Assembly (NCBI RefSeq): GCF_037042905.1
Contig: NC_087249.1
Span: forward strand, 24,986,001-25,050,000
Origin: Lytechinus pictus
Taxonomy: Eukaryota
DNA length: 64,000 bases
Direction: 5' to 3'
How positions within the stretch are numbered: position 1 is the first letter of the stretch; every line of letters begins with the position of its first letter. The notes under the pieces are model-generated. The model saw only the letters and a program-made list of their open reading frames with translations. It was not told the origin of the DNA and did not search any database. The position numbers were made by a program, and so were the translations under genes. Shown piece by piece: positions 49,701 through 52,499 of the stretch.

Positions 49701-52499
49701 AAATGTTAAAGTGTTCCATCAAATTGCTTGCCATATTATGTTAGCGCCAAACATTACGACTGAAATAATAACCATTTGACTCTGCAGAACTTCTTCAGAA
49801 AGCATGCACCAAGCGAAGGAGCCCCGTATGGCATCAGCCCTGATGTGATGGATACCTACGTGAAGAGCTGCGCCGGCTACTGCGTCATTACCTACCTACT
49901 AGGGGTTGGAGATCGTCACCTCGACAACCTCCTCCTGACCAAGTGTGGCAAGCTCTTCCATGTTGACTTTGGTTACATCTTGGGGCGGGACCCCAAGCCC
50001 CTACCACCGCCCATGAAGATGAGTAAAGAGATGGTGGAGGGGATGGGAGGGGCGCAAGGGGAGCAGTACCAAGACTTCCGTAAGATCTGTTATACATCAT
50101 TTCTGCATCTCAGAAGGTGAGTGTCCTTGATAATTTGATAATGATGTTGGACATGTTGATGAAGTTGACATCGTTGGTGATGATGATGGATGTGTTGATG
50201 ATATCAGTGGTAATGGCAAATTCATGATGAAGATGATATTGTTGGTGATGATGATGGATGTGTTGATGATATCAGTGGTAATAGCAAATTCATGATGAAG
50301 ATGATATTGTTGGTGATGATGATGGATGTGTTGATGATATCAGTGGTAATAGCAAATTCATGATGAAGATGATATTGTTGATTAAGATAGTGATGTGATA
50401 ATTGCATTGATGATATTCGTGGCAATTGATGGTGTAGATGTTGATGATAGCTTTGCTGGTCATGATTACTTAAGAAATGATTGTGGTGAATATTTTGATA
50501 AAACTGATGTTGAAGATGTTAATGCTATAAGCGATCATTACAATGATAATAAAGATGATATTGATGTTGACAATGAGGGTGTTCATATTAATGATGTTCT
50601 TAAAGAAGTTGACGTTTTGATATTGATATTTTTGATATTATGAGTATATTGTTGGTATGGTTATGTAAATAAAATGAAATTGATGTTTTAGAAATGATGA
50701 TTGAGTATTGATATTTTTTCTATTTCTTTAGACATTCCAATCTAATCTCGAACCTGTTTTCCCTGATGGTGGATGGTTATGTAAATAAAATGATATTGAT
50801 GTTTTGGAAAATGATGATTGAGTATTGATATTTTATTTCCTTAGACATTCCAATCTAATCTTGAACATGTTTTCCCTGATGGTGGATGGTTATGTAAATA
50901 AAATGATATTGATGTTTTGGAAAATGATGATTGAGTATTGGTATTCTATTTCCTTAGACATTCCAATCTAATCTCGAACCTGTTTTCCCTGATCGTGGAT
51001 GGTTATGTAAATAAAGTGATATTGATGTTTTGGAAAATGATGATTGAGTATTGATATTCTATTTCCTTAGACATTCCAATCTAATCTTGAACCTGTTTTC
51101 ACTGATGGTGGATGCCAGTGTGCCTGACATTGCATTAGAACCAGACAAGACTGTAAAAAAGGTCAGTCTAATCAAAATGATTATTTATGAATAGCCAATT
51201 TTTATATAGCGCTTTTCCCAGAATGGCTCAAAGCGCTCTACAGCATATTATTACCCCGGTCATTGGAGTCATTTCAATCCCGCACAAGAAGGGCACAATT
51301 TCCACTCCCTGGGGAGCATTCCTTGCATTCATCGCAGCCTCCTCATGGCGCTGGCAAATTCAAACATACAATATCTTTCGCATCCTACCGGGTACCCATT
51401 TAGCACCTGGGTTGAGAGTGGCAAAGTGTGGATAAACGCCTTGCCAAAGGACGCTAGACCGCGGTGGGATTCGAACACACGACCCTCTATTTACAAGGCG
51501 AGAGTCAGAACCACTTCACCACGGCTCTTCCATTTATTGATTGGATTGGAAATTAGACATTGTAGAAGCTAACAAATTATTTTCCATTTTTTTATAAAGC
51601 ACACTTGAATTTTGCATTCTTCTAAGAAGCTGTTAATTTACTACTTGTGATTACCCGATATGAAATAATGATTGTACTCTTGATTTTACTATGTTTTACT
51701 AAGAATATGTGATTGTCAGTCAGTCCAAATGTTTTATGCTGTAGAAGTTGAATATGCTTGATTTTGAAATGTGTATTTGAGACAAGTTCTTTTTTTAGGA
51801 TTTTGTAAATTCATGGCAGTTCAAAATTGCATCAATGTGATGTATAAAATTTATAACATTGTCAATTATGTAATTCTCTGTATCCCCTTCATTTGATTTT
51901 TTTTTTATAATAGCCTCTAAATGAATAATTGTGTTTATTGATTATAGCTCCAGGATAAGTTTCGTCTAGACCTCACTGATGAAGAAGCGGTTCATTACAT
52001 GCAGACATTGATCGATGAGAGCGTGGGGGCAGTCTTTGCAGCTGTTGTTGAACAAATTCACAAATTTGCCCAGGTAAGGATGATCCCAATTTCATTATTT
52101 GCATTATTTGGTGTGTAGAATGAAATTGTAAAATTCTACATGTTTTCATGACAGACTTGCCAGATGTTTTATCCGTACAATTACCATAAGAACTATGTTA
52201 CTCGGTCATTCAGAATCTAGGAAAGTTGTCAGAATTGTCGGATAAAATGCTGATGAAATGCTCACCCAGGTGTTGTAACACCTATATAATGAAATGCGAT
52301 TGAAATCAAATACGGAATTTCCTGATCTCAATATTCACATTAGCCAAGTAAAGCATTTATAAAGGGGAATCTGGTGGTTTACATCATAGATGTGCTTGTG
52401 CAGGTAGATATTGCATATACTCATTCTTTATTTTATCCTTTCTCTCCCATCCTTTACATCTTCTCTCATTGTCCTACCATTTAGTACTGGAGAAAATAA
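31520..52499 (+). CDS. PIK3C3: Phosphatidylinositol 3-kinase catalytic subunit type 3 (Vps34); complete 19-exon gene, 889 aa
   Basis: The hand-spliced exons give a continuous 2670-nt [33 protein letters not shown]...[12 protein letters not shown]. It is colinear with Vps34 C2, helical and kinase domains ([32 protein letters not shown]). All introns are GT-AG with matching phases. Confidence 0.98.
32965..33560 (-). mobile_element. 5'-truncated non-LTR retrotransposon (CR1/L2-group-like ORF2 C-terminus plus 3' tail)
   Basis: [49 protein letters not shown] resembles the end of LINE ORF2; (ttga/ttgaa)n tail at ~32965-33015. Confidence 0.75.
33648..33836 (+). CDS. PIK3C3: PIK3C3 exon 2 (C2 domain)
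   Basis: cag|[13 protein letters not shown]...RAFTTRW(N) |gtaagt. Confidence 0.95.
34043..34284. mobile_element. Short TA-TSD MITE
   Basis: TA|CTGCCGTACTTTGGCAAAA...TTTTGCCAAAGTTGGGCAG|TA. Confidence 0.75.
35156..35213 (+). CDS. PIK3C3: PIK3C3 exon 3
   Basis: tag|[20 protein letters not shown] |gtatga. Confidence 0.95.
35859..35944 (+). CDS. PIK3C3: PIK3C3 exon 4
   Basis: tag| [28 protein letters not shown](G) |gtaaga. Confidence 0.95.
36454..36664 (+). CDS. PIK3C3: PIK3C3 exon 5
   Basis: cag|[14 protein letters not shown]...[15 protein letters not shown] |gtgagt. Confidence 0.95.
37269..37364 (+). CDS. PIK3C3: PIK3C3 exon 6
   Basis: tag| [32 protein letters not shown] |gtaaga. Confidence 0.95.
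38122..38193 (+). CDS. PIK3C3: PIK3C3 exon 7
   Basis: tag| [24 protein letters not shown] |gtgagt. Confidence 0.93.
38644..38748 (+). CDS. PIK3C3: PIK3C3 exon 8
   Basis: cag| [35 protein letters not shown] |gtgaga. Confidence 0.95.
39182..39460 (+). CDS. PIK3C3: PIK3C3 exon 9 (helical/PIK domain)
   Basis: cag| [26 protein letters not shown]...[10 protein letters not shown] |gtatct. Confidence 0.96.
40165..40491. mobile_element. piggyBac-like MITE
   Basis: TTAA|CCGTAAAAGGAC...GTCCTTTTAGGG|TTAA. Confidence 0.8.
40680..40822 (+). CDS. PIK3C3: PIK3C3 exon 10
   Basis: cag| [26 protein letters not shown]...HVDRD(R) |gtattt. Confidence 0.93.
41150..41236 (+). pseudogene. Intronic partial duplicate of PIK3C3 exon 10 (copy of 40693-40779)
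   Basis: 87-nt copy with 3 substitutions. Confidence 0.92.
41499..43251. mobile_element. Foldback element (host of 41950-42811) with long inverted arms
   Basis: tagtatacaaatagc...gaataagaatattcgctattt (41499-41667) is inverted at 43085-43251. Confidence 0.8.
41950..42811. mobile_element. TA-TSD pogo-like MITE nested in a larger foldback element
   Basis: TA|GGGGAAGGCGGGGTAAGTTG...CAACTTACCCCGCCTTCCCC|TA. Confidence 0.88.
43321..43429 (+). CDS. PIK3C3: PIK3C3 exon 11 (variable Pro/Ser-rich loop)
   Basis: tag|[37 protein letters not shown] |gtaacc; phase 2 in and phase 0 out fit the flanking exons. Confidence 0.88.
43596..43634 (+). ncRNA. Degenerate minimal type-I hammerhead-ribozyme-like motif (Penelope-associated type)
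   Basis: GCCT-CCGACGA-A-GATTCT-gct-AGGATC-TAAA-GCTT-AGGC: stem I GCCT/AGGC, stem II, palindromic AAGCTT; the core deviates from CUGANGA/GAAA. Confidence 0.45.
44065..44227. mobile_element. Small palindromic MITE
   Basis: gggcccgtttcataaagagttacaactgttgtaact...agttacaacagttgcaactttttatgaaacaggccc. Confidence 0.75.
44304..44477 (+). CDS. PIK3C3: PIK3C3 exon 12
   Basis: cag| [28 protein letters not shown]...FSQSLSK |gtgggt. Confidence 0.95.
44833..45452. mobile_element. Kolobok/T2-type MITE (same family as 8466-9067, opposite orientation)
   Basis: AGGACAAGGCCACCCC...GGGGTGGACTTGACCT|TTAA; internal homology to the 8.5-kb copy. Confidence 0.85.
45549..46803. mobile_element. Tigger/pogo-like non-autonomous element
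   Basis: TA|CCGTAAGTAACGGTGTATTAACCGCACC...GGTGCGGTTAATACACCGTTACTTACGG|TA, perfect TIRs. Confidence 0.9.
46975..47091 (+). CDS. PIK3C3: PIK3C3 exon 13
   Basis: tag| [15 protein letters not shown]...[10 protein letters not shown] |gtatgt. Confidence 0.93.
47568..47839. mobile_element. Short palindromic MITE family (other copies at ~15034-15401 and ~34373-34642)
   Basis: ggggcctgtcttacaaatagttacgattgatcc...gatcggatcagtcgcaactctttgtaagacgtgcccc shared by three loci. Confidence 0.8.
48099..48362 (+). CDS. PIK3C3: PIK3C3 exon 14 (kinase N-lobe)
   Basis: tag| [12 protein letters not shown]...[21 protein letters not shown] |gtaaaa. Confidence 0.96.
49138..49272 (+). CDS. PIK3C3: PIK3C3 exon 15
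   Basis: tag| [20 protein letters not shown]...LSQEGNIQ |gtaact. Confidence 0.96.
49788..50116 (+). CDS. PIK3C3: PIK3C3 exon 16 (catalytic and activation loops)
   Basis: cag| NFFRKHAP...[12 protein letters not shown]...[18 protein letters not shown]...FLHLR(R) |gtgagt. Confidence 0.97.
50173..50380 (+). repeat. 68-bp minisatellite x3 in a (GAT)n-rich tract
   Basis: gttggtgatgatgatggatgtgttgatgatatcagtggtaat... starts at 50173, 50241 and 50309. Confidence 0.9.
50657..51114 (+). repeat. Tandem array of 4 x ~113-bp units, each containing the exon-17 3' splice site plus the first ~44 nt of the exon
   Basis: AG|ACATTCCAATCTAATC begins at 50732, 50845, 50958 and 51071 (exact 113-bp spacing). Confidence 0.95.
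51071..51161 (+). CDS. PIK3C3: PIK3C3 exon 17 (the only full copy after the decoy array)
   Basis: tag|[31 protein letters not shown] |gtcagt. Confidence 0.93.
51180..51531 (-). mobile_element. tRNA-derived SINE (PIK3C3 intron 17)
   Basis: On the reverse strand: tggtgaagtgg A box, gttcgaatccc B box, the same cccaggtgctaaatgggtacc core, AT-rich tail. Confidence 0.9.
51948..52073 (+). CDS. PIK3C3: PIK3C3 exon 18
   Basis: tag| [42 protein letters not shown] |gtaagg. Confidence 0.96.
52485..52499 (+). CDS. PIK3C3: PIK3C3 exon 19 (YWRK-stop)
   Basis: long pyrimidine tract, tag|TAC TGG AGA AAA TAA; YWRK is the conserved Vps34 C-terminus. Confidence 0.95.
   Translation, partial: YWRK

What the first reader, a model, noticed from the sequence alone, without database searches (positions are those of the whole stretch)
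50657..51161. Three decoy copies of the Vps34 exon-17 3' splice site in a 113-bp tandem array
Seen: a 113-bp unit is repeated 4 times. Each unit has ~69 nt of intron end (pyrimidine tract + TAG) and the first ~44 nt of exon 17, with acceptors at 50732, 50845, 50958 and 51071. Only the last continues into [16 protein letters not shown] and the real donor. Copies differ by a few substitutions (TCG/TTG, AACA/AACC, GATC/GATG), so they are not exact duplicates. Reading through decoy 1 gives [31 protein letters not shown], truncating the kinase domain before its C-terminal helices. Each decoy also has TAT|GTAAAT, defining a 49-nt phase-2/phase-0 mini-exon that could join exon 18 in frame and replace 16 residues with GY. 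Established: the Vps34 C-terminal helix is needed for lipid kinase activity, and premature stops upstream of introns trigger NMD. Inference: the spliceosome must skip three intact upstream acceptors in an essential autophagy/endosomal gene. The array could act as a copy-number-tunable dial for Vps34 dosage, or be a nascent cassette of mutually exclusive exons.
Basis: partly seen in the sequence, partly recalled or inferred. Interest (0 to 1): 0.8.

Follow-up and report, generated by a model that had tools for sequence, protein, structure and literature searches.

The report
Copied splice acceptors in urchin Vps34
A 113-base piece straddling an intron/exon border of the painted sea urchin's Vps34 (PIK3C3) gene is copied four times in a row, leaving three look-alike splice acceptors that the available RNA shows no sign of using; it looks like a tolerated, species-specific minisatellite, not a control device.

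Summary
There are four tandem 113-bp units at 50657-51114. Each carries the intron end (pyrimidine tract plus AG) and the first 44 nt of a 91-nt PIK3C3/Vps34 exon, and only the last unit continues into the real exon.

The window is Lytechinus pictus (100% identical to GCA_037042905.1). L. variegatus and S. purpuratus each have a single copy, so the array arose in the L. pictus lineage. Unit-to-unit divergence is 4-6%, against 7-9% to L. variegatus.

The three decoys carry 3-4 nonsynonymous hits at conserved residues. The real copy carries one synonymous change.

RNA shows only the canonical exon. This holds for two ribo-depleted runs, one assembled transcript that matches the reference haplotype, and the NCBI protein model. 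Read depth over the decoys is zero, and 0 of 24 reads carry decoy letters, giving a steady-state upper bound of about 12%.

The best reading is a junction-spanning minisatellite. It is tolerated because splicing picks the acceptor next to the intact exon. This is the 3' mirror of the human F7 and CBS VNTRs.

Nothing supports the "dosage dial" or "nascent exclusive exons" ideas.

Not tested: NMD-blocked RNA, copy number in other animals, and independent DNA reads.

This scan has already noted about 24 similar decoy-site arrays elsewhere in this genome.

The parts
49785..50116 (+). PIK3C3 kinase-domain exon ('exon 16'); its donor is AAG|GTGAGT at 50117
   Evidence: The peptide matches PDB PIK3C3 residues 773-810. 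An RNA contig piece covers 49785-50114. tblastn with the L. pictus protein also places it here. The start coordinate is approximate.
50117..51070 (+). Intron 16, 954 nt and rich in GATGAT-type degenerate repeats. The same intron is 472 nt in L. variegatus.
50157..50380 (+). A second tandem array in the same intron (68 bp x 3.3). It does not include a splice site.
   Evidence: Tandem Repeats Finder score 420, 97% matches; repeat family D3
50657..51114 (+). The 113-bp x 4 tandem array that spans the intron 16 / exon 17 border
50732..50775 (+). Decoy 1: a 44-nt copy of the exon start behind an intact TTTAG acceptor. It carries TTG>TCG (Leu>Ser).
50845..50888 (+). Decoy 2: a copy of the exon start carrying CTG>ATG (Leu>Met)
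50958..51001 (+). Decoy 3: a copy of the exon start carrying Leu>Ser and ATG>ATC (Met>Ile). Its nearest TTGAT branch-point candidate is changed to TTGGT.
50781..50786 (+). Pseudo-donor GTAAAT (context TAT|GTAAAT). It recurs at 50894 and 51007, and the original intronic copy is at 50665. It matches 6 of 9 consensus positions and lacks G-1 and G+5.
51071..51161 (+). The real 91-nt exon 17, with donor AAG|GTCAGT at 51162. It is the only copy found in RNA.
   Evidence: Depth is 7.6x and 13.6x in the two RNA runs. An RNA contig has exactly 91 nt between the flanking exons. The RefSeq protein agrees.
51948..52073 (+). Exon 18, encoding the C-terminal helices
52485..52499 (+). Last coding piece (YWRK plus stop)

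Best explanation
This is a junction-spanning minisatellite that the gene tolerates.

Origin (inferred). In the L. pictus lineage a 113-bp segment was duplicated in tandem. It ran from 72 nt inside intron 16 to 41-44 nt inside exon 17. The trigger was probably slippage or unequal exchange between short similar motifs: intron TTGGT-ATG and exon TGGTGG-ATG. The intron is already full of GATGAT-type repeats. The duplicate then expanded to four units.

Consequence (follows from the layout). Only the last unit is followed by the rest of the exon. The allele therefore makes normal Vps34 only if the last acceptor is used.

What RNA shows. The last acceptor is the one used.

Why (inferred). All four core 3' signals are equivalent. 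Only the last is backed by a complete exon, with its 47 further exonic bases and a proper donor 91 nt downstream. Exon definition (U1 at the donor stabilising U2AF/U2 at the acceptor) would therefore commit that site. The decoys have only a weak TAT|GTAAAT and AT-rich intron behind them. The three stubs are spliced out as part of a now longer intron and drift as neutral sequence.
For: - Array real in the assembly, and its units are not identical. There are about two private substitutions per unit and only one shared site, giving a star-like pattern.
- Species-specific. All four units map to one place in L. variegatus (L002, acceptor 37062) and one place in S. purpuratus (L004, acceptor 23164).
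- Not brand new. Units differ from each other by 4-6%, against 7-9% to L. variegatus. An essential gene has therefore carried the array for a long time.
- Decoys drift. Relative to the ancestral state shared by both outgroups, the decoys carry 3-4 nonsynonymous changes at conserved Leu/Met residues. The real copy has one synonymous change, C>A at 51101.
- RNA reads. In two ribo-depleted runs, depth is 6-14x on exons 16, 17 and 18. Depth is 0 over 50670-51057, apart from one ambiguous tail of about 24 nt. All 8 and all 16 reads at 51101 carry the real-copy A.
- RNA contig. A 3.1-kb RNA contig (X15) matches the window with no differences, so it is the same haplotype. It has exactly 91 nt between exons 16 and 18.
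- Annotation. The NCBI protein XP_054756285.2 uses the canonical exon.
- Donor strength. The real donors match 7-8 of 9 consensus positions and have G-1 and G+5. The decoy donor matches 6 of 9 and has neither.
- Known parallel. The human F7 IVS7 37-bp VNTR spans a donor, and only the exon-contiguous site is used (PMC1557585).
Against: - RNA depth is shallow: 24 informative reads give a 95% upper bound of about 12% decoy use. It is steady-state RNA with NMD active, so unproductive splicing that is quickly degraded could be hidden.
- The two raw-read animals differ from the window at several exonic SNPs, and no intronic reads were recovered. Whether they carry the array is unknown.
- Only the X15 contig looks like the reference haplotype, and contigs drop rare isoforms.
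- No independent L. pictus DNA (reads or a second assembly) was available to confirm four copies.
- All decoy AGs and pyrimidine tracts are still intact.
- TAT|GTAAAT is the best U1 match among the 68 GT sites in the intron.
- The exon-definition step is inference, not shown.
Confidence: 0.8

Rival explanations
1. Leaky decoys act as a dosage dial. A meaningful fraction of transcripts splice to a decoy acceptor, acquire a premature stop 109-335 nt before the exon 17 donor and are destroyed by NMD. On this view, array copy number sets the amount of productive Vps34 mRNA.
For: The decoy 3' signals are as good as the real one. All decoy read-throughs end in premature stops more than 55 nt upstream of later junctions. 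Steady-state RNA cannot exclude rapidly degraded isoforms.
Against: No decoy reads were found, where about 48 read-equivalents would be expected over the 339-nt region if it were fully retained. Ribo-depleted total RNA should include nuclear, pre-NMD molecules. The array is absent from both other urchins examined, so it is not a conserved control. Decoy sequences drift freely. Many similar arrays are noted in unrelated genes of this genome, which points to a mutational by-product.
Confidence: 0.08
2. Assembly artefact or private somatic/individual variant. On this view the true L. pictus allele has one unit, and the four copies come from mis-assembly.
For: The only DNA showing the array is the assembly that the window comes from. 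No L. pictus DNA run was served, and the older assembly was unreachable.
Against: The units differ by 4-6 substitutions each, of mixed types, plus one indel. Collapse or expansion errors do not look like that. All units share L. pictus-specific states against L. variegatus. A 458-bp array lies well inside single long reads.
Confidence: 0.05
3. A nascent alternative-exon system. The 49-nt mini-exons (acceptor to TAT|GTAAAT) would be spliced to exon 18, giving a Vps34 isoform in which 16 residues are replaced by GY.
For: The frame arithmetic works, and GTAAAT is the best donor-like site in the intron.
Against: No reads lie on any mini-exon. The donor lacks G-1 and G+5. The stubs carry Leu>Ser, Leu>Met and Met>Ile at residues invariant from urchin to human. 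The isoform would delete a conserved segment just before the C-terminal helices.
Confidence: 0.02

Closest known systems
Human F7 intron 7 37-bp VNTR (Borensztajn et al. 2006, PMC1557585)
   Same: It is a minisatellite whose first unit spans an exon/intron junction, so several identical splice sites stand in a row. The pseudo-sites are functional in principle. Physiologically only the site contiguous with the intact exon is used.
   Different: F7 duplicates a 5' splice site, and the most upstream copy is used. Here a 3' splice site with its branch region and pyrimidine tract is duplicated, and the most downstream copy is used. F7 copy number is known to be polymorphic and its pseudo-sites were tested with 50 constructs. 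Neither has been done here.
Other human exon/intron-border VNTRs cited in PMC1557585: the CBS 31-bp VNTR (Yang et al. 2000) and the interferon-induced 6-16 minisatellite with multiple donors (Turri et al. 1995)
   Same: Both are tandem repeats that carry copies of a splice site at a coding exon border.
   Different: Both are donor-side. In 6-16 the extra donors are actually used, giving alternative products. No such use is seen here. I know these two only from the reference list and titles.
Intron gain or extension by tandem duplication (Rogers model; Hellsten et al. 2011, PMC3265369; Lehmann et al. 2010, PMC2891723)
   Same: A tandem duplication that contains splice signals is neutralised because the redundant copy is spliced out, leaving the protein unchanged.
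   Different: Those cases create a new intron from duplicated exon sequence containing AGGT. Here an existing intron simply grows by 339 nt, and no new intron position arises.
Engineered tandem duplications of acceptor or donor sites in globin genes (1983 studies, as summarised in PMC1557585)
   Same: The same experimental design (identical competing splice sites in tandem) has here been made by nature.
   Different: Those were two-copy constructs in mammalian cells, and they gave conflicting outcomes. This is a four-copy natural allele in a sea urchin, read only from steady-state RNA.
Unproductive splicing coupled to NMD (poison exons)
   Same: Use of a decoy would introduce a premature stop upstream of later junctions.
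   Different: Regulatory poison exons are conserved and detectably used. This array is lineage-specific, and no use was detected.

Membership tests
Junction-spanning minisatellite / VNTR (F7 IVS7 type) | Head-to-tail tandem array of a unit of tens to about 100 bp | tested here: met
   Period 113, 4.0 copies, score 796
Junction-spanning minisatellite / VNTR (F7 IVS7 type) | One unit straddles an exon/intron junction, so every unit carries a copy of the splice site | tested here: met
   Each unit has a pyrimidine tract, an AG and the first 44 exon bases
Junction-spanning minisatellite / VNTR (F7 IVS7 type) | Only the site contiguous with the intact exon is used in normal mRNA | tested here: met
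   Zero depth on the decoys; 24 of 24 reads carry the real-copy letter; the RNA contig has a 91-nt exon. The limit of detection is about 12%.
Junction-spanning minisatellite / VNTR (F7 IVS7 type) | Copy number varies among individuals | not testable with these tools
   No L. pictus DNA runs were served. The single read-laying run gave no intronic reads.
Regulated unproductive splicing (AS-NMD) | A stop-containing isoform is detectable | tested here: not met
   No reads over 50732-51070 in two runs, at shallow depth and with NMD active
Regulated unproductive splicing (AS-NMD) | The element is conserved in related species | tested here: not met
   Single copy in L. variegatus and S. purpuratus
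Regulated unproductive splicing (AS-NMD) | The isoform rises when NMD is blocked | not testable with these tools
   This needs an experiment
Mutually exclusive exon cassette from tandem exon duplication | Whole exon copies, each with both splice sites | tested here: not met
   The copies hold 44 of 91 exon bases, and the only donor-like site is TAT|GTAAAT
Mutually exclusive exon cassette from tandem exon duplication | The copies are under coding constraint | tested here: not met
   3-4 nonsynonymous and 0 synonymous changes in the decoys, against 0 and 1 in the real copy. The counts are small.
PIK3C3 / Vps34 gene | Class III PI3-kinase architecture and orthology | tested here: met
   PDB PIK3C3 hits. 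The L. pictus RefSeq PIK3C3 has Pfam C2, PI3Ka and kinase domains and maps exon by exon.

The most novel reading that the evidence does not exclude
The array is one of many junction-spanning minisatellites in the L. pictus genome. Together they would form a natural, copy-number-variable test bed for splice-site choice. They could show that in urchins an acceptor is chosen by contiguity with a complete exon rather than by its own signals or its order of transcription. In some carriers, leaky decoy use plus NMD might measurably lower Vps34 output in proportion to copy number.
Probability: 0.1. Interest if true: 0.5.

Novelty: new member of a known kind. Interest (0 to 1): 0.25.

Why it matters
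As a single locus it matters little. An essential autophagy/endosome kinase gene carries three intact look-alike acceptors, and the available RNA shows only the normal message.

Its value is as a clean natural example, on the 3' side, of a rule shown experimentally for the 5' side in human F7. When identical splice sites stand in a row, the one attached to the whole exon wins.

This genome seems to hold many such arrays. A systematic survey with genotyped animals and NMD-blocked RNA could measure how much information for 3' splice-site choice lies outside the core signals. It could also show how often such duplications are harmless.

Tried and rejected
- **Splice joints from read laying.** The table of joints showed only SINE noise, and the splice joints themselves were not displayed. 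I relied instead on depth, diagnostic letters and the pieces of the RNA contig.
- **A withdrawn inference.** I first read the end of an L. variegatus contig alignment at 51003 as the duplication boundary. The assembled L. variegatus locus shows it is an indel of about 140 nt between the species. I withdrew that inference and used the assembled loci instead.
- **Protein search with a decoy ORF**: no candidate found.
- **Metagenome scan for the duplication-specific joint**: one bacterial chance match.
- **Look-up of the older L. pictus protein version,** tried in order to reach an older assembly: not on record.
- **Rfam and tRNA scans of 50000-52600**: nothing at gathering score.
- **Literature searches for natural acceptor-side junction VNTRs**: nothing specific found.
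- **Recursive splicing, considered and rejected.** The decoy junctions (TAG|ACATTC) do not regenerate a donor.
- **Inclusion of all three mini-exons, considered and rejected.** It runs into a stop.
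Full report
**What is there.**
Reading 50000-52200 and running Tandem Repeats Finder confirm a 113-bp unit repeated 4.0 times at 50657-51114 (93% matches, score 796). It is one of only three arrays scoring 100 or more in the whole 64-kb window. A second one (68 bp x 3.3, 50157-50380) lies in the same intron.

Aligning the units shows that each has three parts. There are 72 nt of intron end, with a 13-15/17 pyrimidine tract, candidate TTGAT branch points and TAG. There are 41 nt of exon start. A 3-nt ATG belongs to both ends. Exon-like parts start at 50732, 50845, 50958 and 51071. Only the last continues into the remaining 47 exon bases and the donor AAG|GTCAGT at 51162.

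The joint that exists only in the duplicated form occurs exactly three times, against none in 100 shuffles.

**The gene and the organism.**
The upstream exon's peptide matches solved PIK3C3/Vps34 structures at residues 773-810 (E 3.5e-17).

A chain of searches led to the sea-urchin cluster of PIK3C3 proteins: an exon-18 search of representatives, then two homologue searches, then a cluster listing. The L. pictus RefSeq protein XP_054756285.2 maps onto the window exon by exon. Its genomic locus (GCA_037042905.1, L003) is 100% identical to window 49700-52600. The window is therefore Lytechinus pictus. The annotated protein uses the canonical 91-nt exon.

**Comparison with relatives.**
I fetched the orthologous loci of L. 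variegatus (L002) and Strongylocentrotus purpuratus (L004). All four window units map to one place in each: L002 36998-37105 and L004 23113-23207. Reading those stretches shows a single acceptor in each, at L002 37062 and L004 23164. The array is therefore derived in the L. pictus lineage.

All four units share L. pictus-specific states against L. variegatus. They differ from one another by 4-6%, against 7-9% to L. variegatus and about 20% to S. purpuratus. The pattern among units is star-like, with about two private substitutions each and only one shared site. Barring gene conversion, the expansion is old relative to the species split and is not a fresh mutation.

The breakpoints sit in similar short motifs: intron ...TTGGT-ATG and exon ...TGGTGG-ATG. 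The intron is otherwise built from degenerate GATGAT-type repeats. This fits slippage or unequal exchange, but the mechanism is inference.

**Constraint.**
With both outgroups giving the ancestral exon start, the changes are as follows:
- Decoy 1: Leu>Ser.
- Decoy 2: Leu>Met.
- Decoy 3: Leu>Ser and Met>Ile.
- Real copy: only a silent C>A at 51101.

The affected residues are invariant between urchin and human (one search shows the human-type sequence). The counts are too small for a test, but the direction is what unused sequence predicts.

**RNA.**
The single read-laying run used two 2026 ribo-depleted L. pictus RNA runs (X19, X20), one L. pictus contig set (X15, which proved to be RNA) and one L. 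variegatus DNA contig set (X22).
- In X19 and X20, depth is 6-14x on exons 16, 17 and 18.
- In the same two runs, depth is 0 in all bins from 50670 to 51057. The exception is about 24 letters in X20 at the decoy-2 acceptor, where the first 22 exon bases are identical to the real copy, so placement is ambiguous.
- At 51101, where the real copy has A and all decoys have C, 8 of 8 and 16 of 16 reads have A.
- The 3.1-kb X15 contig matches the window with no differences and has exactly 91 nt between its exon-16 and exon-18 pieces.

With 0 of 24 reads from decoys, the 95% upper bound on decoy-derived steady-state RNA is about 12%. For full retention from decoy 1, about 48 read-equivalents would be expected over the 339-nt region, and none was seen.

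**Limits of the RNA evidence.**
- No intronic reads were recovered, so the RNA does not independently confirm the array.
- X19 and X20 differ from the window at several exonic SNPs, so those animals may or may not carry it.
- X15 matches the reference haplotype, but contigs hide rare isoforms.
- NMD was active.
- The joint table was swamped by a SINE in the next intron, so splice joints were not listed directly.

**Mechanism.**
By construction, only the last acceptor gives a productive message. An allele whose decoys were used heavily would be a loss-of-function allele of an essential gene.

The four core 3' signals are equivalent. What differs lies downstream. The real exon has 47 more exonic bases and a donor with G-1 and G+5 (7 of 9 consensus matches). 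Each decoy has AT-rich intron and TAT|GTAAAT (6 of 9, lacking both G-1 and G+5).

The most likely mechanism is exon definition. The acceptor that is paired across a complete exon with a good donor is committed, and the stubs leave with the intron. This step is inferred, not shown.

It mirrors the human F7 intron 7 VNTR. There, a 37-bp minisatellite spans the donor, the pseudo-sites are functional, and only the exon-contiguous site is used (PMC1557585). That paper also cites border-spanning VNTRs in CBS and in the interferon-induced 6-16 gene. It further cites conflicting 1983 experiments with engineered duplicated acceptors and donors. The way the duplicate is neutralised by being spliced out also resembles the tandem-duplication model of intron gain (PMC3265369, PMC2891723).

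**Functional proposals.**
A dosage dial acting through NMD is not excluded by steady-state data, but nothing positive supports it. No decoy use is visible, and the array is lineage-specific.

A cassette of exclusive exons is contradicted on three counts. The copies are stubs, they have no credible donor, and they carry damaging substitutions.

An assembly artefact is unlikely, because the units differ by mixed substitutions and share lineage-specific states. No independent L. pictus DNA could be consulted.

**Context from this scan.**
About 24 first-stage notes describe decoy splice-site arrays elsewhere in this same genome. The few that were followed up were judged to be tolerated by-products of repeat expansion. 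I did not test those claims. They suggest that the Vps34 array is one instance of a common mutational outcome in this repeat-rich, highly polymorphic genome.

**Verdict.**
This is a new, acceptor-side member of a known kind, the exon-border minisatellite. Interest is low to moderate.

Noticed in passing
window 51185-51535 (minus orientation), intron 17: A SINE-like retroposon of about 350 bp with a tRNA-like end. It is absent from the L. variegatus orthologous intron: window 51184 and 51536 map to adjacent L002 positions 37175 and 37178. It draws an enormous strand-biased RNA pile-up (up to about 9000x) from genome-wide copies. ARAGORN calls no tRNA in it.
   Followed up: partly
window 50130-50640: The 5' half of intron 16 is a degenerate GATGAT/GTTGAT repeat that includes a 68-bp x 3.3 array. 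S. purpuratus has a longer repeat of the same type at the same place (L004 about 22030-23110). L. variegatus lacks it, and its intron is 472 nt. L. variegatus DNA contigs pile up on 50185-50378 at depth about 7000, so the 68-bp unit resembles a high-copy repeat in that genome.
   Followed up: partly
window 40693-40779 and 41150-41236: An 87-nt interior fragment of another PIK3C3 exon is copied at 97% identity into the following intron, 457 bp downstream. The copy has no splice sites. This is a second local duplication of exon sequence in the same gene.
   Followed up: partly
window 49964, 49973, 50081, 51152, 52568: All or most reads of the two 2026 RNA runs differ from the reference at these exonic sites, several of which are shared with L. 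variegatus. The 2024 RNA contig matches the reference. This indicates divergent haplotypes within L. pictus.
   Followed up: no
L002 37541-38631 and the whole L002 locus: The L. variegatus PIK3C3 gene spans about 38 kb, against about 21 kb in L. pictus. The difference includes an extra segment of about 1.1 kb in intron 17 and an extra segment of about 140 nt just upstream of the exon-17 acceptor region (L002 36865-37005). The introns of this gene turn over fast between sister species.
   Followed up: no
window 27070-27318: A run of 249 N (assembly gap or masked stretch) upstream of the gene. I left it untouched.
   Followed up: no
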